The notes beneath the pieces were generated by a model, which was not told the origin of the DNA, did no database searches, and was given only the letters and a program-made list of their open reading frames with translations. 64,000 nucleotides of DNA, taken from sequence record ON529852.1; one strand, given 5' to 3'. Positions 300 to 14,238 of this stretch are shown here, one piece after another. Both the position numbers and the translations under genes were made by a program. How positions within the stretch are numbered: the stretch's first letter is position 1; every line of letters begins with the position of its first letter.

Positions 300-641
300 A
301 TGTTGACCCAGGTCTACTGTGCTCAGAAGACAATCGACGAACGCGGGACGCGCGGCGCCGTCGTCGGTTACTATCGCTCCGAAATCGCCGCAAAGGTGGC
401 GGCGGAGAAACAAGGCTGGTACGGCGGCGACGGGCAAGTCTCGCGTTGTTGGGTCATTACCGTGGCTGGCCGCTTCTATCCGATTGAGCAGTATCAGGAA
501 AAGGGCGTGCCGGTCGACCTGCTCGACAAGAATATCCCATTGGAACTCAAACGGCGGCGCGAGGTGGCCTGGGTCAAGGTCACCGAGGCGCTCAGCCCCG
601 ATGAACGGGACCTCCTCGGCATTACGGAGCCGCAGGCATGA
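300..641 (+). CDS. hypothetical protein
   Basis: 113-aa ORF abutting its neighbours, phage-like codon usage. Confidence 0.75.
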   Translation: MLTQVYCAQKTIDERGTRGAVVGYYRSEIAAKVAAEKQGWYGGDGQVSRCWVITVAGRFYPIEQYQEKGVPVDLLDKNIPLELKRRREVAWVKVTEALSPDERDLLGITEPQA

Positions 642-1003
642 GCAATCCCGTCGTCCTGATCGTCGAGGAGACGATCCAGCGCGCCTATAAGCTGGACCTT
701 GACGATCCCGCCCACGTCGAATTGGTGGACCGGGTGCTGAACAACCCACTGGAACGCCCGGCGGTGTTCGCCTTCGAGCGCCACACCCCGCCGGCGCTGC
801 TGGACAAGCGCGCCCTCAAGGGCAACCGCACGCCCTGGATCAGCGCGACGAACACCAAGGGCCACCAGGTGCGTCTGGACCCTGTCGCCGAACACGCCGT
901 CAACTCGATGATGACGTTGCTGCACGTCGACGAGAAGGGCAAGGCCTATCACCAGGTCAAGGTGAAGCGCACCACGGTGGAACGCGGGCCGGTGAAGTCG
1001 TGA
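638..1003 (+). CDS. hypothetical protein
   Basis: 121-aa ORF, ATGA overlap with the previous gene. Confidence 0.75.
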   Translation: MSNPVVLIVEETIQRAYKLDLDDPAHVELVDRVLNNPLERPAVFAFERHTPPALLDKRALKGNRTPWISATNTKGHQVRLDPVAEHAVNSMMTLLHVDEKGKAYHQVKVKRTTVERGPVKS

Positions 1004-1317
1004 GTTCGGCGATGCTGTGTCCTGAAAACGCCATGACGGTGGTCGGCGCGCCGCGCGACAAGAGCGGCCCGATCATCCTGCGCCTGCACGCCAGTCACTA
1101 CGCCCAGGCGGTGCAGGCGCTCCTGGAAGAGACGGCCGCCGACCTGCGCGACGACCTGAGCCCCGAGGAGGAGGCGGACCCGCAGGCCCAGGCGGACGCG
1201 GACCACCAGGCCTGGAACGACGCCTGCGATCACTTCACCTCGGTGAAGGTCTATCGCGGACACCCGCTTGAAGGGTCGGACGTCGTGACGCCGCTCCAAC
1301 TGATCCACGAGGAATAG
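1000..1317 (+). CDS. hypothetical protein
   Basis: GTGA overlap, acidic 105-aa ORF. Confidence 0.7.
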   Translation: MSSAMLCPENAMTVVGAPRDKSGPIILRLHASHYAQAVQALLEETAADLRDDLSPEEEADPQAQADADHQAWNDACDHFTSVKVYRGHPLEGSDVVTPLQLIHEE

Positions 1318-1560
1318 ATGCACCCTGGATTCTATGTCGTGCGGATGCCGAAGAACGGCGCCGGCAGCCGCTTGATTGTGGAGAGCCGACCGTTCCGAAA
1401 GATCGCCTGGATCGAGGCGGAAGAGCCCGGCTACGCGCGCCGCCAGGCCGAAAGCTGGCGTGACTTCGTCCAGGACGAGCATCCCAAGGACGACGTCTTC
1501 GTCATCGAGCGTGAAGGCCCGATGGACGAATCCCCGCGTCCTCCTCGGCGGACGGACTGA
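1318..1560 (+). CDS. hypothetical protein
   Basis: 80-aa ORF directly after the upstream stop, GAGGA SD-like sequence. Confidence 0.7.
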   Translation: MHPGFYVVRMPKNGAGSRLIVESRPFRKIAWIEAEEPGYARRQAESWRDFVQDEHPKDDVFVIEREGPMDESPRPPRRTD

Positions 1561-2108
1561 TGAAACCGCCCTGCAAGAAACGCTTCCTGGCGAAGTCCAT
1601 CCAGGACTTGGGGGAGTTCACGCGCCATTACGGCCTGACGCCGCCCGAGGGCCATGACCTTAGCCTGAAGGCTCTGGAGCAGAAATCCTGGGCGTGGTTC
1701 GCCAAATCGCTTCACGACGTCAGTGGCGAGATTTACAGCGCCAGCATCGACGCCTACCTGCGCCCGATGGATCGTCAGTGGGGCACGGCCATGGCGATCG
1801 CCTACGAGCCTGTGCGCGTCGGCGGGCTGGTCTTCATTTGGGACGCGCGTCCCTGTGGAAATCTGGAGCGCTACTTGGACGCCGTCGGCGTCCTGGTGGA
1901 GATCGATCGGGAGAAGAACCCCAACCGCCTCTACGAGGATGACGGCGGACCCGCCCGTTGCGGTCAGCGCTACCACCTCCAGAAACTGGACGGGTCAACC
2001 GTCTCCTGGGGCAACTGCGCCCCGCGCAATGTGGTCTCACACCGGATCACCGAAATGAACCGACAGATCGTCAAGGACCTGACAAGAGACCGATGGCCGA
2101 ACCTCTGA
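1560..2108 (+). CDS. hypothetical protein
   Basis: 182-aa ORF, TGATG overlap. Confidence 0.75.
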   Translation: MKPPCKKRFLAKSIQDLGEFTRHYGLTPPEGHDLSLKALEQKSWAWFAKSLHDVSGEIYSASIDAYLRPMDRQWGTAMAIAYEPVRVGGLVFIWDARPCGNLERYLDAVGVLVEIDREKNPNRLYEDDGGPARCGQRYHLQKLDGSTVSWGNCAPRNVVSHRITEMNRQIVKDLTRDRWPNL

Positions 2109-2359
2109 CCCCCGCCGAGATCGATGAAGGCTGGATCGCCGAGCCCTGCGGCTGCGCCTACCATCCCGGCTCCAGCACCCCGCGCGACCTCGGCGGCGGC
2201 ATGGTCGTGGTCAACGAAGGGTTCCGCCGCCGGTGGTGCCAGACGCACACCGATGAACTCATGCGTGATCGTGCGGCGCTGCGCTATCGGTTGTTCGAAG
2301 CGCCAGATGCGCCGGCGCCTAGCCCGATGGAACACTGGCTCCGGCGCAACCGCGACTGA
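2093..2359 (+). CDS. hypothetical protein (Cys/His-containing)
   Basis: Start re-assigned to ATG 2093 (MAEPLTPAEID...); fills the gap in the operon. Confidence 0.65.
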   Translation: MAEPLTPAEIDEGWIAEPCGCAYHPGSSTPRDLGGGMVVVNEGFRRRWCQTHTDELMRDRAALRYRLFEAPDAPAPSPMEHWLRRNRD

Positions 2360-2360
2360 C

Positions 2361-2831
2361 ATGGCGGTTCTCGACATCGGCTCATGGAAGCCCTGGCCCT
2401 CGGGCGCCCTGTCCAACTTCCCACCCCACGCCTTCGTGTTCGAGGACGTCGAATGCGCCTCCATGGAGGGGCTGGTCCAGGCGTTCAAGTTCAACGAGCC
2501 CTACAAACAGGTCATCACCTGCAAGGCCGTGGGCGAGGCCGCCAAGAACATGGGACGGCGACGCAACCTGCACTGGCAGCGCGTCCAGACCCTATGGTGG
2601 AAGACGGACGCCTACGACCGCCACAGCCCCGAATACCAGGCGCTGCTGGATCGCGCCTACAACGCCCTGGCGACCAACCCAGACTTCCGCGACGCCTTGC
2701 TCGCGACGGGCGAAGACTTCCTGACCCATTCGATCGGCGGGCGCGATCCGCACGAGACCATCCTGACCGAAGCCGAGTTCTGCACCCGGCTGATGCGGCT
2801 GCGCCGCGAAATCCGCGAAGGCCTGAGATGA
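2361..2831 (+). CDS. NADAR family protein (T4 gp30.3/YbiA-like)
   Basis: Start re-assigned to ATG 2361; LSNF...F..E.VECASMEGLVQAFK and RDALLATG...L.HSIG pattern typical of phage NADAR proteins. Confidence 0.7.
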   Translation: MAVLDIGSWKPWPSGALSNFPPHAFVFEDVECASMEGLVQAFKFNEPYKQVITCKAVGEAAKNMGRRRNLHWQRVQTLWWKTDAYDRHSPEYQALLDRAYNALATNPDFRDALLATGEDFLTHSIGGRDPHETILTEAEFCTRLMRLRREIREGLR

Positions 2832-3082
2832 CCGCCCCTTGCATCTATCTGACGGCCCCGGCCGAACTGCATGAGGCCAAGCGCTTCGGCGACGGCTGGC
2901 GCCAGGTGGTGCAGCCGGAACGCTTCCTGTGTGCTTGGGCCACCTATCACGAGGACGCCGTCGCGGCGTTGTCGAAGGCGCCGCCCTGGCTGGTCACCAA
3001 CGCGCTCGCCGGGCACCTGGTGCGCGCCGACAAGGATTGCCCGCGCTGTCCCTACTACAAGGCCGGCGATCCGGTCGAATAG
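2828..3082 (+). CDS. hypothetical protein with C-terminal CxxC
   Basis: ATGA overlap at 2828, MTAPCIYL...CPRCPYY. Confidence 0.65.
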   Translation: MTAPCIYLTAPAELHEAKRFGDGWRQVVQPERFLCAWATYHEDAVAALSKAPPWLVTNALAGHLVRADKDCPRCPYYKAGDPVE

Positions 3083-3101
3083 CCGTAAATCCTGACATCT
3101 T

Positions 3102-3142
3102 CTGCCGTATTTCTTGACACCTACGGCGGCGTTAACCATAGT
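3102..3142 (+). promoter_or_regulatory. sigma70-type promoter with upstream CTGCCGT motif and TTAACCAT site
   Basis: TTGACA (3114-3119), 17 nt, CATAGT (3137-3142); CTGCCGT at 3102-3108; TTAACCAT at 3132-3139. Confidence 0.65.
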
Positions 3143-3175
3143 CCGAGGCTTGAACCCCCGACCTCAGGACTAGCC

Positions 3176-4414
3176 GTGAGCACCTTTGCTGTACCGATCC
3201 TCGCGATCGACGACGTCTACGATCACCCCAACGCTGATCGCCTCTCCATCATCCGCATTCGCGGCTACGAAGCCGTCGCCGGCAAGGCCGAGGACGGATC
3301 GCACCGCTTTGTCAAGGGGGAGCGCATCATCTACGTGCCCGAGGGCGCGGTGGTGCCGGCCGCGCACCTGAAGGAGCGCGGCTACTGGAACGAGGCCAAG
3401 GACATCGGCCTGCTGGCGGGAACCAAGGGCAACCGCGTCAAGGCGATCACCCTGCGTGGCGTGCTGAGCCAGGGCCTGGTGTGGAAGACCGAACCCCTCG
3501 TCGGTGCAAAGGTCAAGGATCGCGCGACCGGAGACATCGTCGCCCAGGTGAATCCGGAGAAGCCTGCGCTGGCGGTCGCCACGGCCGAAGACGGCTCGAA
3601 AACGGCGGTGATGGTTGATTTCGGCGACGACGTCGCCGACTTCTTCGGCATCACCAAATACGACCCGCCGATCCCTCCGGGCCTGGACGGCGACGTCTTT
3701 GGCCTGTTCGAGGCGATGTTCAACTACGACATCGAGAACGCCAAGGCCTTCCCGAACCTGTTCACCGAGGACGACGTCGTCACGGTGACGGAGAAGCTGC
3801 ACGGCACCTTCTGCCGGATGACCTACATGCCCGGCATCGAGCCGCGCGACGATTTGTTCGGCGACGGCCGCGTGGCGATCACCTCCAAGGGCCTGGGCGC
3901 CGACGGCCTGGTGTTCAAGAACACCGCCTTCAATCGTCAGAAGAACGTCTACGTGCGCAATATGCTGCCGCTGGTGGACCACTTCGTCTCGGCCTGCAAC
4001 CAGGACGCCAAGGGCCTGACCGTCCACCTGATGGGCGAGGTTTACGGCGCTGGCGTGCAGGACCTCAAGTACGGCCGAACCGAGGACCAGGGCTTCGCCG
4101 CCTTCGACGTCTGGATCGAGAAGTCGGGCTTCCTGGCCGAGGTCGAGAAGGATTACGCCTGCATCGCCTTCGGGGTGGAGCGAGTGCCGGTCTTGTTCGA
4201 GGGCTTCTACGACAAGGCGCTGATCGAGGACTTCGCCAAGGGCGACACCACGATCGACGGCGCCGAGAACATCCGCGAAGGCGTCGTCGTGACCCTGACC
4301 GGAGAGCAGGACAAACGCCCCGACGGCAACGGCCTGGGCGGCACCCTGCGCCCGATCTGCAAGGTCGTGTCGGAAGCCTACCTGACCCGCAAGGGCGGGA
4401 CCGAACTGCAATAG
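3176..4414 (+). CDS. RNA ligase (DRB0094/Rnl2-like family)
   Basis: N-terminal HPNADRL, YVPEGAVVP and RVKAITLRGVLSQG; nucleotidyltransferase motifs TEKLHG, GEVYG, FDV, REGVVV. Confidence 0.85.
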   Translation: MSTFAVPILAIDDVYDHPNADRLSIIRIRGYEAVAGKAEDGSHRFVKGERIIYVPEGAVVPAAHLKERGYWNEAKDIGLLAGTKGNRVKAITLRGVLSQGLVWKTEPLVGAKVKDRATGDIVAQVNPEKPALAVATAEDGSKTAVMVDFGDDVADFFGITKYDPPIPPGLDGDVFGLFEAMFNYDIENAKAFPNLFTEDDVVTVTEKLHGTFCRMTYMPGIEPRDDLFGDGRVAITSKGLGADGLVFKNTAFNRQKNVYVRNMLPLVDHFVSACNQDAKGLTVHLMGEVYGAGVQDLKYGRTEDQGFAAFDVWIEKSGFLAEVEKDYACIAFGVERVPVLFEGFYDKALIEDFAKGDTTIDGAENIREGVVVTLTGEQDKRPDGNGLGGTLRPICKVVSEAYLTRKGGTELQ

Positions 4415-4429
4415 GAGTCACGTTTTCCG

Positions 4430-4774
4430 ATGCAGTCGCTTCAGGACGGCCTGGTTGAATGGGCCACCTACGCCTTCGGGCGTGAAACGATCGACGACCA
4501 GCGCCAGCGCGCCATGCGCTGCCTGGAAGAGGCGGTCGAACTGGCCCAGGCCCTGGGTGTGGATGAGGCGGCCTGCCACCGGCAGGTCGTCCACACCTAT
4601 GGCCGCCCCGTCGGCGATCCCGCCCAGGAGGTCGCCGGCGTCATCAACGGCGCTCTGATGGCGGCCGAGAGCATCGGCGTCGACGGCCTGCTGGTCGCCG
4701 AGGCTGAACTGGAGCGGGTCTGGCTCTGCGTGGACGAAATCCGCATCAAGCAACTGGCGAAGGTTCAGCCCTAA
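4430..4774 (+). CDS. MazG-like NTP pyrophosphohydrolase
   Basis: LEEAVELAQA...QEVAGV helical acidic motif. Confidence 0.6.
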   Translation: MQSLQDGLVEWATYAFGRETIDDQRQRAMRCLEEAVELAQALGVDEAACHRQVVHTYGRPVGDPAQEVAGVINGALMAAESIGVDGLLVAEAELERVWLCVDEIRIKQLAKVQP

Positions 4775-4777
4775 GCC

Positions 4778-6712
4778 GTGGCCCACATCGACTATGAGAA
4801 CAACCTGTTTCTCGGACGCGGCACGTTCGAGGAGCGGGAAATCTTCCGTGATGTCCTGGGCAAGTTCCAGGGCTTCACCTTTTCCAAGGAATACGGCTGC
4901 TGGACGACCGGCGACGTCGTGATGGCCCAGGCGGTCAAGGGCGTGGTCTGGACCGACCGCGCCATGGCGCGTCTGCGCACCCTGCTGGAAGCCGCCAAGA
5001 TCAGCGAAGAACTGTCGTGGCGATCGGATACGACCTATGTGCCGCCGTCGCCGCCGGGGTTGAGTTACCTCCCCTACCAACGCGCCGGAATCGAATACGC
5101 ACTGATGCGCAAGGACACGCTGATCGCCGATCAGCCTGGTCTGGGCAAGACCATCCAGGCGATCGGCGTCTTGAACGCTGACGAGACCATCAACAGCGCC
5201 CTGTTCATCGTGCCGGCCTCGCTGAAGATCAACTGGCATCGCGAGATCGACAAGTGGATGCTGCCCAACCTGACCTTCGGCATCGCCGAGGCCAAGCGGA
5301 TCGACAAGGAGTTGATCGGTTACGCCAAGGCCTATGAATATGTCGAGGACGGGGTCTACAAGACCGGGGCCAAGGCGGGCCAGCCCAAGTTCAAGAAGGT
5401 CGAGGTCCAGGGCAAGCCCAAGTATCGCAACGTCGAGACGTCCGACTACTGGCCCGACACCGACGTCGTCATCATCAACTACGACATCCTGGAGCGCTTC
5501 GCGGTCCAGATCAAGGAACGCAACTGGGACTACCTGGTCTGCGACGAATGCCATGCGCTGAAGAGCGCCGCGACCGGGCGCACCCTGTTCGTGCTCGGCG
5601 GCAAGCAGGAGTTCAACAAGGCCCAGCGCGACAAGCGCAAGGCCGAGGGCCTGTCGTCGCGGCCGATCTGGCATCGCGCCATCGACGCCAACCGCCGCGT
5701 CTTCCTGTCCGGCACGCCGATGATGTCGCGGCCGGTGGAGTTGTGGCCCATCGCTCACGCCTTCAACCCCTCCGACCTGGGCCGCGACTATGTCGACTTC
5801 GCCTACCGCTACTGCGCCGCCTGGACGACCGCCTACGGTCTGGACGTTTCGGGCGCCTCGAACCTGGAGGAGTTGGGCCAGAAGGCCCGCGCCAGCTTCA
5901 TGGTGCGCCGGCTGAAACGCGAGGTGCTACCGGAACTGCCGCCCAAGCGCCGCATCGTCGTCACCCTGGACAGCCCTGAAATCCGCGAACTGGTCGCCCG
6001 TGAAGACGAACTGGCCCAGGCGTTGCGCCTCTACGAGAACGTCACCCTCAACAAGGGCGTGGTGGTCGACGAGATCAACCACGGCATCCAGATCGTCAAC
6101 CACATGACGCGGATGGGGATGACGGACGAGTTCGATCCCGACAATCCGAACTGGCGCTCGCTCGACCTCGACTACGCCGCCTCGGTCGCCGGTCTGGAGC
6201 CGCCGGCCGTCGCCATCCTGTTCGAGGAAATGGCGAAGGTGCGCCGCGATCTCGGCCTCGCCAAGCTGAGCGCGCTCAAGCCGTGGATGGATGATTTCCT
6301 GGAGGGTGGCGAGAAGCTGCTGATGTTCGCCTACCACTCCGACGTGGTCAAGGCGCTGGCCCTGGCGGCCGAGAAGTGGAACCCGGCGGTGATCTGGGGC
6401 GGCACGCCCCTGCACAAGCGCCAAGGCGAGGTCGACAAGCTGCAAGGCGACGAAAGCTGCCGCCTGTTTATCGGCAACATCCAGGCGGCCGGCGTCGGCT
6501 TCACCATGACGCGCGCCCATGACGTCGCCTTCGCCGAGGGCGACTGGGTGCCCAGCCAGATTGAGCAGTGTGAGGACCGCGCCTGCCGCATCGGCCAGAC
6601 GGCCGAGAAGATCAACAGCTACTTCCTGGTCGCCAACGGCTCGCTCGATTCCCGCATCGCCCAGGCCGCCAAGGCCAAGGAAGACAACATCAACCTGGCG
6701 ATGGGGGCGTGA
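4778..6712 (+). CDS. SNF2/HARP-like helicase
   Basis: ADQPGLGKT (Walker A), DECH, LSGTP, GVGFTMTRA, QCEDRACRIGQ. Confidence 0.9.
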   Translation: MAHIDYENNLFLGRGTFEEREIFRDVLGKFQGFTFSKEYGCWTTGDVVMAQAVKGVVWTDRAMARLRTLLEAAKISEELSWRSDTTYVPPSPPGLSYLPYQRAGIEYALMRKDTLIADQPGLGKTIQAIGVLNADETINSALFIVPASLKINWHREIDKWMLPNLTFGIAEAKRIDKELIGYAKAYEYVEDGVYKTGAKAGQPKFKKVEVQGKPKYRNVETSDYWPDTDVVIINYDILERFAVQIKERNWDYLVCDECHALKSAATGRTLFVLGGKQEFNKAQRDKRKAEGLSSRPIWHRAIDANRRVFLSGTPMMSRPVELWPIAHAFNPSDLGRDYVDFAYRYCAAWTTAYGLDVSGASNLEELGQKARASFMVRRLKREVLPELPPKRRIVVTLDSPEIRELVAREDELAQALRLYENVTLNKGVVVDEINHGIQIVNHMTRMGMTDEFDPDNPNWRSLDLDYAASVAGLEPPAVAILFEEMAKVRRDLGLAKLSALKPWMDDFLEGGEKLLMFAYHSDVVKALALAAEKWNPAVIWGGTPLHKRQGEVDKLQGDESCRLFIGNIQAAGVGFTMTRAHDVAFAEGDWVPSQIEQCEDRACRIGQTAEKINSYFLVANGSLDSRIAQAAKAKEDNINLAMGA

Positions 6713-8374: not shown

Positions 8375-8711
8375 GTGGGGAACTTTCTGTTCCAAGGCCC
8401 GGCAAGCCGGGGTTCCCCATACCCGTGGACGCCCTTAGGCGGCCAGGAGGACTCGTTCGCCAGCGGCGAAGTTGTCGTTGTGTGCTTCGACAGTTGTCAA
8501 AGTTGGATCGTGAGCGGCCGAAACCGCCATGCAGACCCTAGCACTCGCCATTCAATCCCGTCACCAACGTCAATCGATACTGGTCGGCCCCTCAAACCGC
8601 GCCCGTCTCCCATCATAGGAGGGGGATTGGTGGAGCCGACGGGATTCGCACCCGTGTCTTGTCCGTCTGTTTCGTTCTCTCTGCTTCGGTCCGAAGACCT
8701 CCGCGCGACGA
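8375..8711 (-). ncRNA. ssrA: two-piece (circularly permuted) tmRNA, alphaproteobacterial type
   Basis: Acceptor piece ends ACGGGTGCGAATCCCGTCGGCTCCACCA (CCA end at 8628); 36-nt intervening segment; coding piece starts GGGGCCGA at 8591 (G3.U70 Ala identity); tag ORF 8491-8435 reads VEAHNDNFAAGERVLLAA*. The 8375 end is approximate. Confidence 0.9.
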
Positions 8712-9232: not shown

Positions 9233-9970
9233 ATGCTGCACAGTGTTCACGGCACGGTTCCGAAGCTTAAACGATGGTGCGGGCCTTCCGCCATCTCCAT
9301 CATTACCGGCCAGCCCTATCACCACGCTCTGGCGTTGCTTAAGGACGTCAAGGCCGCCAGACGCACCTACCGTGTCACGAAGGCGCCGATCGTCAAAGGC
9401 GCGTCATCGCCTAGCGTGCGTACCGTTCTGAAGAGCCTGGGTTATCTGACGACGCAGCGGGTGACGCCGGCAGGGATCACCGTCGCGGCCTGGCTGGCGG
9501 CGCGGCGCCCCGCCGACCAGTTCACCACCTTCCTGATCGTGGCGGCCAACCACTGGATAGTGGTGCGCGGCGAAGAGGCGTGCTGCGGCATTCTCGGGAC
9601 GCCGACGCCGATCGGTCAGATGAAGTTTCGACGCGGCGTCGTCACGGAATGCTGGGTCGTCACGCCGTCCGCGCAGGGCGTGGCCCCGATCGTGACCGAG
9701 GCGCGCAAGCCGCCCGCGCGGGCGTCGTCCTCCTGGGACCGCAGCGAGGCCCGCGACCGCCGCGCCTTCGTCAAGCTGGCGCGCCAGCACGCCTTCACCT
9801 ACGACATCGTCCGGGATTGCGACACGATCCGCTACATGGAGATCGCGCCCTGCGCCATCTTCCCCAAGGGGCTGGACACCCTGCACCATGACTGGGCGGA
9901 AACCCTGGACCGGGTCCGGCATTGCCTCGATCACCCCGAGGACGCCGCCTCGGGCAGCTACGGCCGCTGA
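9233..9970 (+). CDS. hypothetical protein, N-terminal C39/papain-like Cys-His motif
   Basis: WCGPSAISIITG and NHWIVV segments; followed by a terminator. Confidence 0.6.
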   Translation: MLHSVHGTVPKLKRWCGPSAISIITGQPYHHALALLKDVKAARRTYRVTKAPIVKGASSPSVRTVLKSLGYLTTQRVTPAGITVAAWLAARRPADQFTTFLIVAANHWIVVRGEEACCGILGTPTPIGQMKFRRGVVTECWVVTPSAQGVAPIVTEARKPPARASSSWDRSEARDRRAFVKLARQHAFTYDIVRDCDTIRYMEIAPCAIFPKGLDTLHHDWAETLDRVRHCLDHPEDAASGSYGR

Positions 9971-9977
9971 ACGCAAG

Positions 9978-10010
9978 AGCCCCGACCGAGCGATCGGTCG
10001 GGGCTTTTTC
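9978..10010 (+). terminator. rho-independent terminator (possibly bidirectional)
   Basis: GCCCCGACCGA-GCGA-TCGGTCGGGGC followed by TTTTT. Confidence 0.8.
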
Positions 10011-10035
10011 TCGCGCCATCGTTTGTATCTCGGCC

Positions 10036-10952
10036 GGCGCAGCGTCAGAAGGGTGTGTCGCTAGACCTCCGTCGCGGCGCCAGGGCACTGGGGCTCCCTA
10101 GCACAATCCTCACCTGAACGTGGCTTTCCTCCCCAAGGGGCTGAAGGTGGCGGTGTCCAGGCGACCCTGCGGGGCTCACACGACAAGGCCTCTTCTCAAT
10201 GCCAGGCATAGAAGTAGGCAGAGAGCATAGGTTCTTCCTACCCTCGTCATTGTCGTGGTCCGATTTCCGTCTATCACAGCCTCTGGCTGCCGTCACGCCT
10301 GGTTCCCATTTCTAGGACGGCGTTCCCCTCAGAAGACGGGTCCTGGTGGACCGCGTGCGGCTCTTCAGCGCCTGACGGAACTCGACGACGTGGTAGCCGG
10401 CCGTCTGAACAAGCGTCCCCAAGCGCTCCCAGGGACATGCCGTAGGAGTGTGGCAGGGTCCGCCCCACGCTGTGTCAGGATATACGACAATGAAGAGGAG
10501 GGGTCAATACCGCCTCTGGCGGCCGTCACGCCTAATCGTTCGTCTCGGGCGGCGTTCCCGTCAGGCCTGATTGTCCCCGGCCGAGGTTTGTTCGGGGGAG
10601 CGGTGCGGTCAATCACCCCGACTCACGTTCTCTCGTAACCCGACAGTACGGGCTTAAGCGCGCACGAGCGCTGCAAGGCAGTCACGCGGTGGTCGACTTG
10701 GTGAGGTCATCAAGCCCAGTCGCGCAATCCCACCCTGTATGACGGGATTCACGGCTATCGTCAAGGGGAAACGGGCGCTCTCTCCCGGTCACGCCTCGTC
10801 CTGATGTCTCAGCCGGCGTTCGCTTCAGACAGTGCGGCAGTCTCGGGGCCGTCCCACTCTCCCGCTGTCGTCGGGCCTGTTCCCAGAGGAAGGTCTACCC
10901 CAGGGCAGTCTGCTCCAGAGGCCAGGTCAGGGCGAACCCTGTGTGCTGCGCC
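10036..10952 (-). ncRNA. candidate ~917-nt large structured ncRNA (GOLLD/ROOL-class size and context)
   Basis: Interval between two terminators with no convincing gene; 8-bp end-to-end helix GGCGCAGC/GCTGCGCC; second long-range helix 10889-10897 with 10062-10070; three copies of an internal motif. Confidence 0.65.
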
Positions 10953-11003
10953 TAAGGACCTTCAGCAAGATTGAAGCCTACCAGAACAAACCGAAGCGGG
11001 CAA

Positions 11004-11036
11004 AGAAAAACGGCCCCGATCCGAAGATCGGGGCCG
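11004..11036 (-). terminator. rho-independent terminator of the TROVE gene
   Basis: CGGCCCCGATC-TTCG-GATCGGGGCCG followed by TTTTTCTTT on the minus strand. Confidence 0.8.
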
Positions 11037-11094
11037 CATCGTTCTTTACGCGGCAGCGTAATTCCGCGAACGGATTACGAATACCCGTATTGGA

Positions 11095-12483
11095 TCAGCC
11101 GCCGACGAGGCCGTCGTCGAACTCCATCGCCTCGACCTCACGGATATAGCGCAGGACGCTCTCCGAGAAGCCGTCGATGTGGACCCATCCGTTGCCGTAG
11201 CCGATGCCGTTTTCATAGCTGGCGACGTTGATCATGTAGGCCTTGCCGGCCTTGGGCGCCGGCAGTCGCCCGCCACCCATCCCGCTGCTCAGCGTTCCCG
11301 ACGCCTGTTCGTCGGTGATGACGATCAGGCGGTCGCAGGCGAACTGACGGTTCACCACGTCCACGGCCTGGGCCAGGGCGGTGCCGTTGTGCGGCTGCGA
11401 ACGGATCACCGCATCGACCCCCGCCATGCCCTTGCGGGCCGGGACCTCGACCAGACCGTTGGAGAAGGTCACGACGCGCACGTCGCCCGGCAGGATCGCC
11501 GCCAGCGTCGCCGCCGCATCCATCCGGGTCAGGTCCGACTTTCCGGACAGTTTTTGCCGCATGGAGTAGGAGACGTCGACCATGACCACGGTCGAACCCT
11601 TCAAGGGTTCGGCCTGATCAATCGTCGCCACGAGGGCGTCGTCCAGCGCCCGCTCGAACGAGGGCGCATAACGCGCCGCCGCCGTGAAGCGGAAGGGCAG
11701 GACGCGGTCCGCGCCCTTGCGCGCGCGGATCGCAGCATTGACCAGATCGCGGTCGACGCCGGCCTGCTCCATGTTGCGCAGGTTGCGCAGCAGGGCGAGG
11801 TAGCCCAGTTTGCCGTCGGCCAGCAGACGCGTGAACGTCGCCTTCTTGTCGGCGCCGCCCGACAGGGCGACTTCCCAGGTGTCGGGCGCCGTCAGTTCAT
11901 TGTCGACCAGCTTCTTGTAGAGGACCTCGCGGTCGTCGTTCGCCGGCTTGGCGTGCGCCAGAAACAGAACGTCGCGCAGGCGCACGGACTTGGCCCGGTC
12001 GTACTTGGCGATCTGATAGGCGTCGAAGTTGCCGAAGGCCAGCGACAGCCCCTTCTTCACCTGAGCGGACAGCGGCGCCTTCTTGCCGTCGGCGCGCACC
12101 GGGTTGAGCGCCCAGTAGAGAGCCAGGAACTCGCTCAGTTCATCGGCGCGCTGGATGACGCGGGCGATGGTCAGCGACACCAGGGCCGAGCCGGACCCGC
12201 GTTGGGCCAGAACGACGAGCAGCAGAAGGGGGACGTGACGCAGCTTGGCGTCCTCACGCGCTTCAATCGCGATCTGGGCGAGGGTCTCGACCGGAACTTC
12301 CTTGGCGAGGCTCTGGATACGGTCGGCGATCGACACGCCGCTCTCGTAGAAATTGTCTTCCCACAGCAGGCAGGACATGACCGACCGGCGCAGGGCCTGG
12401 GTCTTGGTCATCCGATCGGCCGGTGCGCCTTCATGGGTGCGCGCGGTGGTCGTCTTGGGCTTTGCGTTGATCGACGCCATAAT
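11095..12483 (-). CDS. rsr: Ro60/TROVE-domain RNA-binding protein with C-terminal vWA domain
   Basis: Start probably ATG 12483 (MASINAKP, GGAGG SD). THEGAPA, LRRSVMSCLLWEDNFYE, KYDR, TWE, YLALLRNLRN, RVLPFRF; vWA MIDAS DVSYSM...T...VITDEQ. Confidence 0.92.
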   Translation of the reverse strand: MMASINAKPKTTTARTHEGAPADRMTKTQALRRSVMSCLLWEDNFYESGVSIADRIQSLAKEVPVETLAQIAIEAREDAKLRHVPLLLLVVLAQRGSGSALVSLTIARVIQRADELSEFLALYWALNPVRADGKKAPLSAQVKKGLSLAFGNFDAYQIAKYDRAKSVRLRDVLFLAHAKPANDDREVLYKKLVDNELTAPDTWEVALSGGADKKATFTRLLADGKLGYLALLRNLRNMEQAGVDRDLVNAAIRARKGADRVLPFRFTAAARYAPSFERALDDALVATIDQAEPLKGSTVVMVDVSYSMRQKLSGKSDLTRMDAAATLAAILPGDVRVVTFSNGLVEVPARKGMAGVDAVIRSQPHNGTALAQAVDVVNRQFACDRLIVITDEQASGTLSSGMGGGRLPAPKAGKAYMINVASYENGIGYGNGWVHIDGFSESVLRYIREVEAMEFDDGLVGG

Positions 12484-12508
12484 GGGTCCCCTCCTCGTCT
12501 GGTCAAGC

Positions 12509-12675
12509 GACCAAGAGGTCGGGGAGGAACAAGCACGAGCCCGGTTCATCCGGTGCGTCTACCACTTCCGCCACCTGCACCAGAGATGCAGGCCAGGACT
12601 TGAACCTGGATACCCTTGACGGGCGCCGGCTCCAGCGAAGTATAGGCTCGTTACGCCATCCCCGACCTCTTGGTC
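12509..12675 (-). ncRNA. Y RNA, YrlA-like unit 1
   Basis: 17-bp terminal helix; TGGCGT/GTTCC internal motif; permuted tRNA domain: CCAGGTTCAAGTCCTGG T-arm, loop-closed TGCA acceptor-like stem, GTGGCGGAAGTGGTAGACGCAC D-arm. Confidence 0.8.
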
Positions 12676-12682
12676 AGTGAAC

Positions 12683-12825
12683 TCCGGCGCTCTGGTAGGA
12701 AGGCGGGGGAACATGCGCGACCGGATGCGGGATCGAACCGCGAGACCGGGGGTTTGAATCCCGGCTTATCAACCAGCGATGTAACCGACCGCTCTCACCA
12801 CCCGCCCACCAACCAGGGCGCCGGA
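12683..12825 (-). ncRNA. Y RNA-like unit 2 (non-permuted tRNA-like insert)
   Basis: 14-bp terminal helix; TGGTGA/GTTCC motif; inner hairpin with AUUCAAA loop followed by GCGGTTCGATCCCGC T-arm. Confidence 0.7.
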
Positions 12826-12833
12826 AAAGCAGA

Positions 12834-12987
12834 AACATGAAGGCGGCGGGGGAATAAGCGACCCCACTCTTTTTAGGCGTGCTACCGTTACACCAAACGC
12901 CGCTAGGCGACGTTGCGGAATCGAACCGCTCATCCCGCTCCACATGCGATGAAAGTGACGTCTATCGCCACCCACCGCCTTCATGTT
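12834..12987 (-). ncRNA. Y RNA, YrlA-like unit 3
   Basis: AACATGAAGGCGG terminal helix; TGGCGA/ATTCC motif; GCGGTTCGATTCCGC T-arm, AACGTCGC-CTAG-CGGCGTT closed acceptor-like stem, GGTGTAACGGTAGCAC D-arm. Confidence 0.8.
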
Positions 12988-12995
12988 GTTGGCTC

Positions 12996-13170
12996 AGAAG
13001 CGTGTGGTGGATCGACAGGGGAACCGGCGGAAAGGCGCCGTTTGGACTATCGTTCTACCAACTGAACTACCGCCGCGCCCGAAGGTGCGCCGAGTGGGAT
13101 TCGAACCCACGACCTACAGTTTGCGAAGAAGGCCTCTCCCTCACCACCTGTCGATCCGCCACACGCTTCT
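12996..13170 (-). ncRNA. Y RNA, YrlA-like unit 4
   Basis: ~23-bp terminal helix; TGGTGA/GTTCC motif; GTGGGTTCGAATCCCAC T-arm, TTCG-capped acceptor-like stem, GTAGTTCAGTTGGTAGAAC D-arm. Confidence 0.8.
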
Positions 13171-13240
13171 CAACCCTGTCCTAGACAGACCCGAGGACCC
13201 AACCCCGGACGAGGAACCGAAGTTCCCCGGCGGGATCAGG

Positions 13241-13328
13241 ATCGTCCGGGAATAGGCGGAACCGAGAGCGGGGCCAAGGCCCCCACGTACCAAAAACGAA
13301 GAACTCGGTCCCTGTCGCCACGGACAAT
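13241..13328 (-). ncRNA. short Y RNA-like unit 5 (no tRNA domain)
   Basis: ATTGTCCG/CGGACGAT helix; TGGCGA/ATTCC motif; ACCGAG/CTCGGT stem; pyrimidine-rich loop TTCTTCGTTTTT; GGGGCC/GGCCCC hairpin. Confidence 0.6.
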
Positions 13329-13354
13329 GACTGTGTGCCCGATCCCGGTTCAGG

Positions 13355-13372
13355 TGTCAACAACAACGGCAG
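13355..13372 (-). promoter_or_regulatory. CTGCCGT-N5-TTGACA element upstream of the Y-RNA/Ro60 operon
   Basis: Exact match to the recurrent motif; the -10 box is weak (CACACA/CACAGT). Confidence 0.5.
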
Positions 13373-13392: not shown

Positions 13393-13427
13393 AAAAAGAA
13401 AACCCCCGGCCGAAGCCAGGGGTTTCC
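13393..13427 (-). terminator. rho-independent terminator after the repressor-like gene
   Basis: AAACCCCTGGC-TTCG-GCCGGGGGTTTT-CTTTTT on the minus strand. Confidence 0.75.
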
Positions 13428-13458: not shown

Positions 13459-14238
13459 TCAGACGCCGATCTTGCCCACCACCTTGCCCAGCAGGGTGAG
13501 GCTCTTGGCCGGAACGTCGCGGTGGCTGCGACGGTCCTGATCGAAAATGCGGTAGGGGCCGTTGGCGCTGGGGCGGGTCAGGTGGTCGACGCGGACCTCG
13601 CCGTCCAGGGCGTAGACAAAGGTGGCGCCGGTGGGGGTGGGGGTCGCCTCGCGTTGGACGAAGGCCATTTCACCCGGTTGCAGGTTCTCGGCGAAATCGT
13701 CGATTCGGATCAGGGCGAGAGATTCAGTCGGCACGTCGAACTGGGTTTGCAGCCAATCGGCGAACATGGGCCAGGCGCGGGCGGCGGTGAATCCCTTGCG
13801 GACGCCGAAGTATTCCACCTCTTGCAGGGTGACGAGGTCGTCGATCCCGTCGGCCAGCCACTGCGGCGCGGTTTGCAGCGCCTCGGCCAGGATGTCCTCT
13901 TTCTGGGTGCCGAACGCCAGCCATTCTGGCGAACATTGCAGCGCCTCGGCCAGGGTCACGATCTTGTCGATGTCCGGCAAGACGTCGCCGGTCTCATACA
14001 TGCAGTAGGCCGAGCGGGACAGCACCTTCCACTCGCCCTGGCGTTTATTGAAGAACCTGATCTTGGCCGCCACTTCGGCCTGGGACATGTCCAGTTCCAT
14101 GCGGCGCGACGTCATGCGCTCCTGCATGGTGGTGGGATTATCGATCATCCCTTTGAGCGAACCCTTGCGATGCATGGGTCCCTTCTCCTTGACAACGGCA
14201 GACTTGGTCGTGCGGGTCGCTTCCAGCGTGCTCGGCAT
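13459..14238 (-). CDS. XRE-family HTH regulator with S24-like C-terminal domain (CI/LexA-like)
   Basis: RRMELDMSQAEVA...SRSAYCMYETG...IVTLAEALQCSPEWLAFG; C-terminal beta domain ending LLGKVVG. Confidence 0.8.
   Translation of the reverse strand: MPSTLEATRTTKSAVVKEKGPMHRKGSLKGMIDNPTTMQERMTSRRMELDMSQAEVAAKIRFFNKRQGEWKVLSRSAYCMYETGDVLPDIDKIVTLAEALQCSPEWLAFGTQKEDILAEALQTAPQWLADGIDDLVTLQEVEYFGVRKGFTAARAWPMFADWLQTQFDVPTESLALIRIDDFAENLQPGEMAFVQREATPTPTGATFVYALDGEVRVDHLTRPSANGPYRIFDQDRRSHRDVPAKSLTLLGKVVGKIGV

What the first reader, a model, noticed from the sequence alone, without database searches (positions are those of the whole stretch)
12509..13328. Five tandem Y-RNA-like units directly upstream of a phage Ro60/TROVE gene
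Seen: five consecutive self-closing hairpin units on the minus strand (13328-13241, 13170-12996, 12987-12834, 12825-12683, 12675-12509). Each has a long terminal helix interrupted at the same position by TGGYG(A/T) on the 5' strand and (G/A)TTCC on the 3' strand. Three contain a circularly permuted tRNA domain (T-arm, loop-closed acceptor stem, D-arm). The array ends 26 nt before the likely Ro60 start. Established: bacterial Ro60 (Rsr) binds Y RNAs via a bulged helix with a GNCGA-like 5' motif, and YrlA RNAs have this permuted tRNA mimicry. Inference: the phage carries a diversified set of Y RNAs of three architectures, co-transcribed with its own Ro60, possibly as decoys for host anticodon nucleases or as tethers. 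An array of five is more than the one or two per locus I know of.
Basis: partly seen in the sequence, partly recalled or inferred. Interest (0 to 1): 0.88.

Follow-up and report, generated by a model that had tools for sequence, protein, structure and literature searches.

The report
Tandem Y-RNA genes before phage Ro60
A giant Brevundimonas phage carries five back-to-back genes for small structured "Y RNAs", three of them rearranged tRNA look-alikes, directly upstream of its own Ro60 RNA-binding protein gene; the kind of RNA is already known from bacteria and phages, but arrays this long and varied have not been described in the papers I could read.

Summary
The window is Brevundimonas phage vB_BpoS-Kabachok. 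The 980-nt gap upstream of its Ro60 (TROVE+vWA) gene holds five closed hairpin units at the stated coordinates. Each has the motif pair TGGYGW / RTTCC at the top of its terminal helix: 5 found against 0.15 expected by chance in 64 kb.

Related phages keep the units, and covariation is strong: 96% of cells pair, 24 of 27 stem pairs show compensatory changes, and 0 of 500 shuffles reach this. A covariance model built from them finds 163 matches (E ≤ 0.01) in 67 of 71 sequences searched, nearly all just upstream of Ro60 on the same strand.

U2, U3 and U5 are circularly permuted tRNA mimics: ARAGORN calls each a tRNA once it is de-permuted. U5 is class II, Leu-like. U3 keeps its own anticodon-like arm.

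Rfam's YrlA model matches significantly but never reaches its gathering score. Y RNAs next to phage Ro60, including in the close relative CcrColossus, are already published.

This is therefore a divergent subfamily of a known kind. The arrays are unusually long (5 here, 8 in CcrColossus, 6 in a Rhizobium phage) and carry a nearly invariant UACUUC element that is not explained. Ro60 binding, RNA processing and any decoy role remain untested.

The parts
13398..13427 (-). Intrinsic-terminator-like hairpin that ends the upstream HTH-repressor gene transcript. It marks the 5' limit of the Y-RNA/Ro60 unit.
   Evidence: 13-bp stem followed by a T run. Several Rfam terminator-type models touch it weakly.
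13332..13360 (-). Promoter-like element: -35 TTGACA at 13360-13355, a 17-nt spacer, and a -10-like CACACA at 13337-13332. This would start transcription at about the first base of U1.
   Evidence: TTGACA is invariant and at a fixed distance from the first unit in five phage lineages (alignment A4). Coordinates. The sigma-70 consensus scan did not call it because the -10 is poor, so it is inferred.
13241..13328 (-). U1, the minimal Y-like unit. It has an 8-bp outer stem, UGGCGACAG, an inner stem GGACCGAG/CUCGGUUC, GUUCUUCG, a small GC hairpin and AUUCC. It has no tRNA-like domain.
   Evidence: Fold; descriptor hit; model R1 30.3 bits; conserved in Bambus, Kikimora and Colossus.
13171..13240 (-). 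Spacer holding an 18-bp hairpin with a UUCG loop plus a small hairpin. It has no Ro-type motif. Kikimora and Colossus carry an extra Y unit at this position.
   Evidence: Fold z -2.6. The Bambus orthologue has a different sequence but the same hairpin, z -4.8.
12996..13170 (-). U2, the classical YrlA-like unit. Parts: 23-bp outer stem; UGGUGAGG; 7-bp inner stem; CUUCUUCG; anticodon-stem analogue ACUGU/AUAGU; T arm 13110-13094; loop-closed acceptor stem 13093-13070; D arm 13067-13052; GGUUCC.
   Evidence: Fold z -5.9. Rfam YrlA 27.1 bits, E 0.0026. RNAalifold on six orthologues: 21 of 54 pairs compensatory. R1 129.8 bits. The de-permuted sequence is called a 75-nt tRNA by ARAGORN.
12834..12987 (-). 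U3, a permuted whole-tRNA mimic. Parts: 17-bp outer stem; UGGCGAUAG; inner stem; UUUCAUCG; anticodon-arm-like hairpin 12950-12934 with loop AUGUGGA; T arm 12929-12915; closed acceptor 12914-12896; D arm 12893-12879; AUUCC.
   Evidence: Fold z -5.9. R1 114 bits. After rotation only, with no artificial loop, ARAGORN calls a 73-nt tRNA with anticodon GUG.
12683..12825 (-). U4, which has a T arm only. Parts: outer stem with bulges; UGGUGAGAG; 8-bp inner stem; UUACAUCG; D-loop-like CUGGUUGA; a hairpin with the 9-nt loop AUUCAAACC; T arm 12741-12727; GUUCC. It has no closed acceptor stem and no D arm.
   Evidence: Fold z -4.9. R1 50 bits. ARAGORN does not call a tRNA at default settings. Rfam tRNA-Sec only 21.8 bits, E 0.18.
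12509..12675 (-). U5, a permuted class II (Leu-like) tRNA mimic. Parts: 19-bp outer stem; UGGCGUAA; inner stem CGAGCC/GGCUCG; UAUACUUCG; long variable arm 12626-12610; T arm 12609-12593; 8-bp closed acceptor 12592-12574; 3-bp D stem with GGAAGUGGUAGA loop 12571-12555; GUUCC.
   Evidence: Fold z -5.5. R1 116.7 bits. The de-permuted sequence is called an 85-nt tRNA with a long variable arm by ARAGORN.
11095..12508 (-). A 28-nt unstructured leader with Shine-Dalgarno GAGGAGGGG (12496-12488), then the Ro60 orthologue CDS (ATG 12480, stop at 11095; 461 aa; TROVE + vWA with a DxSxS MIDAS motif).
   Evidence: Pfam TROVE 45.6 bits (cut-off 23) and VWA_2 27.3 bits (cut-off 27). Full-length match to Thermus phage phiLo Ro60, PDB 9KOP/9L5Y, E 1.2e-20. 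GenBank CDS KABACHOK_03570. The leader does not fold.
11010..11037 (-). Intrinsic-terminator-like hairpin 58 nt after the Ro60 stop codon; the likely 3' end of the transcription unit.
   Evidence: 12-bp stem, 9 of them GC, followed by a T run.

Best explanation
This is a tandem array of five Y-RNA genes of a divergent, phage-type YrlA subfamily. I infer that one promoter transcribes them together with the phage's own Ro60 gene.

Each unit is a closed hairpin. Its base is a long, sequence-variable outer stem. On top of that sits a conserved asymmetric internal loop: U-GGYG-(N)WAG on the 5' strand and CGY-YUG-UUCC on the 3' strand. Next comes a 7-8-bp inner stem, then a nearly invariant UACUUC/UUCAUC element. 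By analogy with other Y RNAs, this conserved module is the Ro60 docking site.

The top of each hairpin is a variable effector domain. It is absent in U1. In U2 it is a permuted tRNA body in which the Y stem replaces the anticodon loop. In U3 it is a permuted complete cloverleaf with its own anticodon-like arm. In U4 it is a T arm with a D-loop-like element. In U5 it is a permuted class II, Leu-like tRNA body.

Inferred mechanism: the precursor is cut in the 7-8-nt single-stranded spacers. Each RNA loads onto phage Ro60. The different tRNA-like heads let the Ro60 particle engage different tRNA-recognising host or phage factors, or tether Ro60 to an exoribonuclease such as PNPase. Both were shown for bacterial Y RNAs and for Thermus phage phiLo.

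Shown here: the structures, their conservation and covariation, the tRNA mimicry, the homology to YrlA and the genomic linkage to Ro60. Inferred: transcription, processing, Ro60 binding and biological role.
For: Existence: exactly five motif-bearing hairpins against 0.15 expected; folds with z -4.9 to -5.9.

Covariation:
- U2 orthologues: 21 of 54 pairs compensatory.
- 14 units from five phages: 96.1% of cells paired against 67% shuffled and about 50% slid; 24 of 27 pairs compensatory; 0 of 500 shuffles reach this.
- 141 distinct units family-wide: 92.7% against 59%; covariation score 0.50 against 0.12. That alignment is fitted to the model.

Linkage to Ro60: model R1 gives 163 hits at E <= 0.01 in 557 kb. 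Nearly all lie within about 1 kb upstream of Ro60 on its strand, and nothing else in the 64-kb window reaches E <= 0.01.

Homology to YrlA: Rfam RF02553 hits at 27-52 bits, E from 2.5e-9 to 8e-3, on several units per array.

tRNA mimicry: de-permuted U2, U3 and U5 are called tRNAs by ARAGORN.

Transcription unit: conserved TTGACA; flanking terminators and none inside the array.

Protein: TROVE+vWA; closest solved structure is phage phiLo Ro60. That protein binds two upstream Y-like RNAs and host PNPase (PMC12135203).

Precedent: YrlA RNAs near Ro60 in 254 bacteria and 22 phages (PMC4201824).
Against: - No unit, here or in about 70 related loci, reaches the Rfam YrlA gathering score of 69 bits.
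- The 5' motif fits the published GNCGAAN0-1G only through GNCGA, and only in U1 and U3. It is GGUGA in U2 and U4 and GGCGU in U5.
- Nothing here shows that the RNAs are expressed, cut apart or bound by Ro60.
- My model gave only weak matches in phiLo (24 bits, and downstream of the gene). The one phage system with binding data is therefore not directly bridged to this family.
- U1 does not fold better than shuffles on its own.
Confidence: 0.8

Rival explanations
1. The main job of the array is to act as a panel of tRNA decoys, with Ro60 mostly stabilising or presenting them. The tRNA-like heads would titrate tRNA-targeting host defence nucleases or other tRNA-binding enzymes during infection. 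This concerns function and is compatible with the units being Y RNAs.
For: - U3 carries a 7-nt anticodon-like loop with U33 and R37 (AUGUGGA).
- Among related units, 26 have canonical anticodon-like loops, and 11 of these read U-G-U (GUN anticodons).
- CUGUUAA is kept from Caulobacter to Xanthomonas phages.
- Colossus and PW unit 4 are about 95% identical, yet two adjacent differences fall on anticodon positions 34-35.
- The loci often sit inside phage tRNA gene clusters.
- Hughes et al. 2020 proposed that YrlA could competitively inhibit an anticodon nuclease (PMC7790460).
Against: - Only one of Kabachok's five units (U3) has a canonical anticodon-like loop. In U2 and U5 the anticodon loop is replaced by the Y stem.
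- The loop counts are not phylogenetically independent.
- No nuclease target is known in Brevundimonas or Caulobacter.
- No experiment bears on this.
Confidence: 0.2
2. The units are not separate trans-acting RNAs. They form a structured 5' leader of the Ro60 mRNA, serving for example as autoregulatory Ro60 binding sites or as protection against 5'-end-dependent decay.
For: The array lies between the only promoter-like site and the Ro60 start. The last unit ends 28 nt before the ATG, and there is no internal terminator.
Against: - Each unit is a self-closed hairpin separated by a 7-8-nt spacer, like polycistronic tRNA or Y RNA precursors.
- The units are homologous to YrlA, which accumulates as a discrete RNA (PMC4201824).
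- In crAss001 the weak matching units lie downstream of Ro60.
- Five to eight diversified tRNA mimics are more than a leader would need.
- The ribosome-binding region itself is unstructured.
Confidence: 0.08
3. The region is a decayed tRNA gene cluster or a set of repeated hairpins with no function of its own.
For: Annotation pipelines called pieces of the orthologous units tRNA-Ser (Kikimora, Gurke) and tRNA-Gln (CcrColossus). tRNA genes lie nearby.
Against: - In native order no unit is a tRNA by ARAGORN or Rfam.
- The permuted order is conserved.
- The outer and inner stems covary strongly across very different sequences.
- The module is always linked to Ro60.
Confidence: 0.02

Closest known systems
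YrlA, the bacterial tRNA-like Y RNAs (Rfam RF02553; Chen et al. 2014, PMC4201824), including those reported in mycobacteriophages and CcrColossus
   Same: They are encoded within about 1 kb of a Ro60 orthologue on the same strand. A long stem is formed by the 5' and 3' ends, with a GNCG-type motif. The order is T arm, loop-closed acceptor stem, D arm. Rfam E-values are significant on several units.
   Different: - No unit reaches the gathering score.
- This family has an extra helix: the outer stem plus the inner stem.
- It has a nearly invariant UACUUC element not present in the Rfam consensus.
- The 5' motif is GGYG(N)WAG rather than GNCGAA.
- Some units keep a complete anticodon-like arm (U3) or a class II variable arm (U5).
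- Some units lack the tRNA domain (U1) or have only a T arm (U4).
- Arrays have 5-8 units.
Thermus phage phiLo Ro60 with Yrl1 and Yrl2 (PMC12135203; PDB 9KOP, 9L5Y)
   Same: It is the closest solved structure of this Ro60 (E 1.2e-20). It is also a phage, and Y-like RNAs are described upstream of its Ro60 gene. Binding to Ro60 and to host PNPase was shown.
   Different: phiLo has two Y-like RNAs, defined by a CGAA motif, and no tRNA-like domain is described. My model matches phiLo only weakly, and downstream of the gene.
Deinococcus radiodurans Yrn1/Yrn2 and the four small RNAs upstream of rsr
   Same: Several small RNAs are encoded upstream of the Ro60 gene. The Y RNA tethers Rsr to PNPase, which is established knowledge cited in PMC4201824.
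   Different: The tRNA-like features are oriented differently and are thought to have evolved independently. There are at most four RNAs, and they are not a uniform modular array.
Vertebrate Y RNAs (two to four per species)
   Same: The 5' and 3' ends pair to form a stem with a conserved distorted helix bound by Ro60, and a variable upper loop acts as the effector.
   Different: They have no tRNA-like domain. They are separate polymerase III genes. The motif is GGUCCGA / UUGAC.

Membership tests
YrlA / bacterial Y RNA | Encoded within 4 kb of a Ro60 orthologue and on the same strand | tested here: met
   The array occupies 13328-12509 and Ro60 occupies 12480-11095, both on the minus strand. 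The same arrangement is seen in 67 of 71 sources searched.
YrlA / bacterial Y RNA | The 5' and 3' ends pair into a long stem that holds the Ro60 binding site | tested here: met
   Outer and inner stems: 96% of cells paired, 24 of 27 pairs compensatory, 0 of 500 shuffles reach this. Family-wide 92.7% paired.
YrlA / bacterial Y RNA | GNCGAAN0-1G motif near the 5' end | tested here: inconclusive
   U1 GGCGACAG and U3 GGCGAUAG match only the GNCGA core. U2 and U4 have GGUGA, and U5 has GGCGU. Rhizobium phage units have UUGCGAA. Family consensus is U-GG-c-G-u-A-G.
YrlA / bacterial Y RNA | tRNA-like domain in the order T arm, loop-closed acceptor stem, D arm | tested here: met
   Met for U2, U3 and U5: ARAGORN calls tRNAs after de-permutation, and Rfam YrlA aligns T/AS/D of U2. 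Not met for U1 (no domain) or U4 (T arm only).
YrlA / bacterial Y RNA | Score at or above the Rfam RF02553 gathering threshold (69 bits) | tested here: not met
   Best in the window is 27.1 bits. Best in relatives is 52.3 bits, in Xanthomonas phage MET23-P3.
YrlA / bacterial Y RNA | Accumulates as a discrete RNA bound by Ro60 | not testable with these tools
   Needs RNA-seq or Northern blots and Ro60 pull-down or EMSA.
Ro60 / Rsr protein | TROVE (HEAT-repeat ring) domain followed by a vWA domain with a MIDAS motif | tested here: met
   Pfam TROVE 45.6 bits and VWA_2 27.3 bits, both above their cut-offs. Full-length alignment to phiLo Ro60 with DVSYS (DxSxS) aligned to DVSGS.
tRNA gene | Canonical cloverleaf in native 5'-3' order, detected by ARAGORN or by Rfam tRNA at threshold | tested here: not met
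   No tRNA is called in 12509-13328. Only tRNA-Sec at 19-22 bits, E 0.18-0.85.

The most novel reading that the evidence does not exclude
Phage Ro60 loci encode panels of circularly permuted whole-tRNA mimics. Each is grafted onto a common Ro60-docking stem and each imitates a different tRNA class: class I, class II Leu-like, and units with real anticodon-like loops. Their anticodon positions change quickly between sister phages. Such a panel would be a counter-defence against tRNA-targeting immunity, or a way to hijack tRNA enzymes. The invariant UACUUC element would be a second, undescribed protein-contact site.
Probability: 0.2. Interest if true: 0.8.

Novelty: new variant of a known kind. 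Interest (0 to 1): 0.55.

Why it matters
What the tRNA-like domains of bacterial Y RNAs do is still an open question. These phages offer natural arrays of five to eight Y RNAs that share one docking module but carry different tRNA-like heads. They sit next to a phage Ro60 and often lie inside tRNA gene clusters. CcrColossus infects the laboratory model Caulobacter crescentus, so deleting a unit, swapping heads or pulling down Ro60 are ordinary experiments there.

There are practical consequences too. About 160 units in this Ro60 clade are missed by Rfam at its curated threshold. Some are wrongly annotated as tRNA genes in GenBank. The covariance model built here could seed a new Rfam family or a YrlA clan.

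Tried and rejected
- Rfam at gathering threshold on the window and on 26 related loci: no YrlA call. Only the E-value mode shows the relationship.
- ARAGORN on the native sequence: nothing in the array. ARAGORN on U4 finds nothing at default settings and only a contrived model when relaxed.
- A relaxed regular-expression descriptor was noisy, giving 7-8-bp chance hits across the window. I replaced it with the covariance model.
- I tried to bridge to the only phage system with binding data, phiLo. The model gives only 24 bits, downstream of the gene, and 9.6 bits in the upstream gap, so no direct link.
- Ralstonia phage RsoM2USA (Ro60 45% identical) gave no match up to E = 0.1.
- I looked for further units or other RNAs in the 1.1-kb unannotated stretch after Ro60 (9971-11094) and found none.
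- I considered a hairpin between the CGA of the 5' motif and the UCG of UACUUCG. CGAA/UUCG, CGAU/AUCG and U2's UGA/UCG fit it, but Kikimora u3 breaks it, and it would be pseudoknotted with the well-supported inner stem. I left it open.
- The promoter-like hit at 12506-12479 is rejected because its -10 overlaps the Ro60 start codon and 0.6 such hits are expected by chance.
- Chen et al.'s supplementary tables and three Wolin-laboratory reviews are not held. I could not check how many YrlAs were already listed for CcrColossus.
Full report
**Source**

The window is identical to Brevundimonas phage vB_BpoS-Kabachok (ON529852.1). This is a 356-kb siphovirus of the Dolichocephalovirinae, the subfamily of phiCbK. 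Window position 11000 equals record position 197000.

The finding lies in a 980-nt stretch with no annotated gene. On one side is a DicA/RstR-like HTH gene (13459-14238, minus strand). On the other is CDS KABACHOK_03570 (11095-12480, minus strand), annotated as hypothetical. That protein is a Ro60 orthologue:
- Pfam TROVE scores 45.6 bits against a cut-off of 23, and VWA_2 scores 27.3 against 27.
- It aligns over its full length with the Ro60 of Thermus phage phiLo (PDB 9KOP/9L5Y, E 1.2e-20).
- Its DVSYS aligns with the MIDAS DxSxS of that protein.

Yes.
U2-U5 have z-scores of -5.9, -5.9, -4.9 and -5.5, and none of 200 shuffles folds as well.
- U1 is not significant on its own (z -1.8).
- A strict descriptor finds exactly these five sites in both strands of the 64 kb. 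The descriptor is a helix of at least 8 bp, then TGGYGW, 40-200 nt, RTTCC, then the helix partner. Markov shuffles give 0.15 on average and never more than 2.
- The only correction is that U5 ends 28 nt, not 26, before the annotated ATG.

**Anatomy of a unit**

This comes from reading, and was checked by alignment. From the base upward each unit has:
1. An outer stem of 8 to 25 bp whose sequence differs from unit to unit.
2. A conserved asymmetric internal loop. The 5' strand reads U-GGYG-(N)WAG. The 3' strand reads CGY-YUG-UUCC.
3. An inner stem of 7-8 bp.
4. On the 5' side, always 10 nt after the first motif, the element UACUUC(G), or UUCAUCG in U3 and U4.
5. A variable head.

Across 127 non-redundant units from many phages, the positions of UACUUC are 85-100% conserved. 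That is more than the GGYG motif itself. I cannot explain this element. In some units it forms the 5' strand of a local stem, and in others it appears unpaired.

The heads differ between units:
- **U1** has only a small GC hairpin.
- **U2** has an anticodon-stem analogue that continues into the Y stem, then a T arm, a loop-closed acceptor stem and a D arm.
- **U3** has the same three arms plus its own anticodon-like arm with the 7-nt loop AUGUGGA.
- **U4** has a D-loop-like CUGGUUGA, a hairpin with a 9-nt loop and a T arm, but no acceptor or D arm.
- **U5** has a long variable arm, a T arm with UUCAAGU, an 8-bp closed acceptor and a 3-bp D stem with GGAAGUGGUAGA. From my own knowledge of tRNA-Leu sequences, this is the class II pattern.

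**Test of the permuted-tRNA claim**

I rotated each sequence at the acceptor loop and removed the Y stem.
- U2 and U5 were given an artificial anticodon loop. ARAGORN called them a 75-nt class I tRNA and an 85-nt tRNA with a long variable arm.
- U3 needed no artificial loop. ARAGORN called it a 73-nt tRNA with anticodon GUG.
- In native order nothing is called.
- U4 is not a tRNA at default settings.

**Related phages and covariation**

The gap and its units are kept in several relatives:
- Domovoi and Papperlapapp (99% identical to Kabachok over the Ro60-array region).
- Bambus and Marchewka (91%).
- Kikimora and Gurke (77%).
- Caulobacter phages CcrColossus and CcrPW.
- A group of 43-kb Xanthomonas phages.

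The evidence for covariation is:
- For the U2 orthologues of six phages, RNAalifold recovers the outer stem, inner stem, anticodon-stem analogue, T arm, acceptor and D arm. Of 54 pairs, 21 show compensatory changes.
- For 14 tRNA-bearing units of five phages, the outer and inner stems pair in 96.1% of cells. Shuffling the partners gives 67%, and sliding the partner gives about 50%. Of 27 pairs, 24 have changes on both sides, and no shuffle of 500 reaches the observed values.
- The inner stem was not part of my descriptor. It is complementary within a unit (mean 5.7 bp) but not between units (3.8 bp).

**A covariance model and the wider family**

I built model R1 from the 14 units. It has 163 positions and 35 pairs.

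- Over the window and 70 loci that encode relatives of this Ro60, it gives 163 matches at E <= 0.01. The loci come from GenBank phages, IMG/VR contigs and GTDB genome contigs, 557 kb in all.
- Nearly all matches lie on the Ro60 strand within about 1 kb upstream of the gene.
- In the window it finds U2 (129.8 bits), U5 (116.7), U3 (114) and U4 (50), and nothing else in 64 kb.
- With filters off on the local region it also finds U1 at 30.3 bits.

Counts per locus among the best 150 matches:

| Units detected | Sources |
|---|---|
| 1 | 24 |
| 2 | 23 |
| 3 | 10 |
| 4 | 6 (the window among them; the model did not pick up U1 here) |
| 6 | Kikimora and Gurke |
| 7 | CcrColossus and CcrPW (8 with the U1 homologue seen by eye) |

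Further results from other loci:
- Rhizobium phage RHph_TM21B has six tandem units with UUGCGAA and UUACUUCG.
- crAss001 has two weak units downstream of its Ro60, and RsoM2USA has none.
- On the model-fitted alignment of 141 distinct units, 92.7% of cells pair against 59% shuffled, and the covariation score is 0.50 against 0.12. That alignment leans towards the model.
- About 100 of the 141 units have the T arm and about 86 have the D arm.

**Relation to known families**

Rfam's YrlA model (RF02553, gathering score 69) never reaches threshold, here or in any relative. In E-value mode it matches several units per array:

| Unit | Bits | E-value |
|---|---|---|
| Xanthomonas MET23-P3 unit 1 | 52.3 | 2.5e-9 |
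| Colossus unit 3 | 42.3 | 2.1e-6 |
| Kikimora unit 5 | 38.8 | 2e-5 |
| MET23-P3 unit 5 | 37.5 | 4.9e-5 |
| Kabachok U2 | 27.1 | 0.0026 |

The family is therefore homologous to YrlA but distinct from the curated model. Compared with the Rfam consensus it has an additional helix and the UACUUC element, and its 5' motif is GGYG(N)WAG rather than GNCGAA.

What the literature says:
- Chen et al. 2014 reported 355 YrlA-like RNAs near Ro60 in 254 bacteria and 22 phages. They listed all multiple hits within 4 kb (PMC4201824).
- A 2025 paper states that Y-like RNAs and Ro60 were identified in mycobacteriophages, CcrColossus and Bacillus phage G. It shows that phiLo Ro60 binds two upstream Y-like RNAs and host PNPase (PMC12135203).
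- Hughes et al. 2020 suggested YrlA might competitively inhibit an anticodon nuclease (PMC7790460).

I could not read Chen's supplementary tables. I therefore do not know how many units they listed for CcrColossus.

**Transcription unit (inferred)**

- A terminator-like hairpin (13427-13398) ends the HTH gene transcript.
- A TTGACA at 13360-13355 is invariant, and at a fixed distance from the first unit, in five lineages.
- No terminator-like site lies between it and the Ro60 stop codon.
- A 12-bp terminator-like hairpin follows Ro60 at 11037-11010.
- Units U2-U5 are separated by only 7-8 nt (GAGCCAAC, UCUGCUUU, GUUCACU).
- The 70 nt between U1 and U2 hold an 18-bp hairpin. It is kept in Bambus with a different sequence.
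- The promoter region and the 28-nt leader with GAGGAGGGG do not fold.

All this fits one precursor that carries five Y RNAs and the Ro60 message. No expression data were available.

**Mechanism and rivals**

The best-supported reading is that the conserved lower module docks Ro60 and the variable head selects a partner. Ro60 docking on the conserved stem of Y RNAs is established for vertebrate and Deinococcus RNAs. The role of the head is inferred from the tether function of Deinococcus Y RNA and from the phiLo Ro60-Yrl-PNPase complex.

A functional variant is that the heads are decoys for tRNA-targeting enzymes. It has some hints in its favour:
- 26 related units have canonical anticodon-like loops, and 11 of them read U-G-U.
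- CUGUUAA is kept from Caulobacter to Xanthomonas phages.
- Colossus and PW unit 4 differ at two adjacent anticodon positions in an otherwise about 95% identical unit.
- Several loci are embedded in phage tRNA gene arrays.

These counts are not independent, and only U3 of Kabachok has such a loop.

The alternatives of a purely cis-acting leader or of decayed tRNA genes are less likely. The units are self-closed, they are homologous to YrlA, they covary, and they are always linked to Ro60.

**Verdict**

The kind is already known, including in the nearest Caulobacter relative. As far as I could check, the following are new:
- the size of the arrays;
- the common two-stem docking module with an invariant UACUUC;
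- the range of heads, including a class II mimic and complete permuted cloverleaves;
- the fact that about 160 such units escape Rfam's threshold.

I rate it a new variant of a known kind, of moderate interest.

Noticed in passing
window 8435-8690 (-): A circularly permuted (two-piece) tmRNA gene: Rfam RF04321, 57.1 bits against a gathering score of 47. It is not annotated in ON529852, and the genome paper states that no tmRNA could be detected with ARAGORN. The same gene is present in Kikimora and Gurke. It lies between tRNA-Met and tRNA-Cys, about 2.4 kb from the Ro60 gene.
   Followed up: partly
L002 4459-4533; L004 4442-4516; L005 6120-6187: GenBank annotations call parts of the Y units tRNA genes: tRNA-Ser in Kikimora and Gurke unit 5, and tRNA-Gln in CcrColossus unit 4. 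The callers joined the Ro-motif strand, the anticodon-like arm and the T arm of a permuted unit. These are probably not tRNAs.
   Followed up: yes
all units; window 13303-13297, 13130-13124, 12953-12947, 12783-12777, 12642-12636: The heptamer UACUUCG (variants UUCUUCG, UUCAUCG, UACAUCG) always lies 10 nt after the GGYG(N)WAG motif. It is the most conserved element of the family (85-100% per position in 127 units), yet it has no consistent pairing partner. Its role is unexplained.
   Followed up: partly
window 13171-13240 (-): The spacer between U1 and U2 holds an 18-bp hairpin with a UUCG loop, plus a small hairpin. The Bambus orthologue keeps the hairpin with a different sequence. Kikimora and Colossus have an extra Y unit at this position, so this may be a remnant or a processing site.
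   Followed up: partly
L076 1314-2445 (Rhizobium phage RHph_TM21B); L077 3945-4354 (crAss001): The Rhizobium phage has six tandem Y-like units upstream of its TROVE gene, flanked by tRNA-Leu genes. Their motif, UUGCGAA, is closer to canonical GNCGAA. crAss001 has two weak units downstream of its TROVE gene in a 900-nt unannotated gap.
   Followed up: partly
L054, L055, L062, L064 (MAG contigs), positions about 600-5700: In several contigs the Y units and Ro60 sit inside dense arrays of 12-20 tRNA genes, typical of phage tRNA islands. Ro60 with Y RNAs appears to be a recurrent part of such islands.
   Followed up: no
L005 6016-6202 versus L006 6018-6202: CcrColossus and CcrPW unit 4 are about 95% identical but differ at two adjacent positions of the anticodon-like triplet (CUG versus UAG). 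Orthologues in other phages read GUG, UAG or UGG between conserved loop flanks.
   Followed up: partly
window 9971-11094: About 1.1 kb without an annotated gene lies between the Ro60 terminator and the convergent hypothetical gene at 9233-9970. It gave no Rfam match and no match to the Y model.
   Followed up: partly
window 12481-12549 (-): The longest ORF of the Ro60 frame starts at an ATG at 12549, inside U5. The annotated start at 12480 has a strong Shine-Dalgarno sequence and is the likely one. Gene callers that prefer long ORFs would overlap the last Y unit.
   Followed up: yes
L005 2570-2810 (-) and L006 2631-2869 (-): My relaxed descriptor found a 13-14-bp helix with the motif pair inside the spanin genes of CcrColossus and CcrPW. 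The covariance model did not report it, so it is probably chance.
   Followed up: partly
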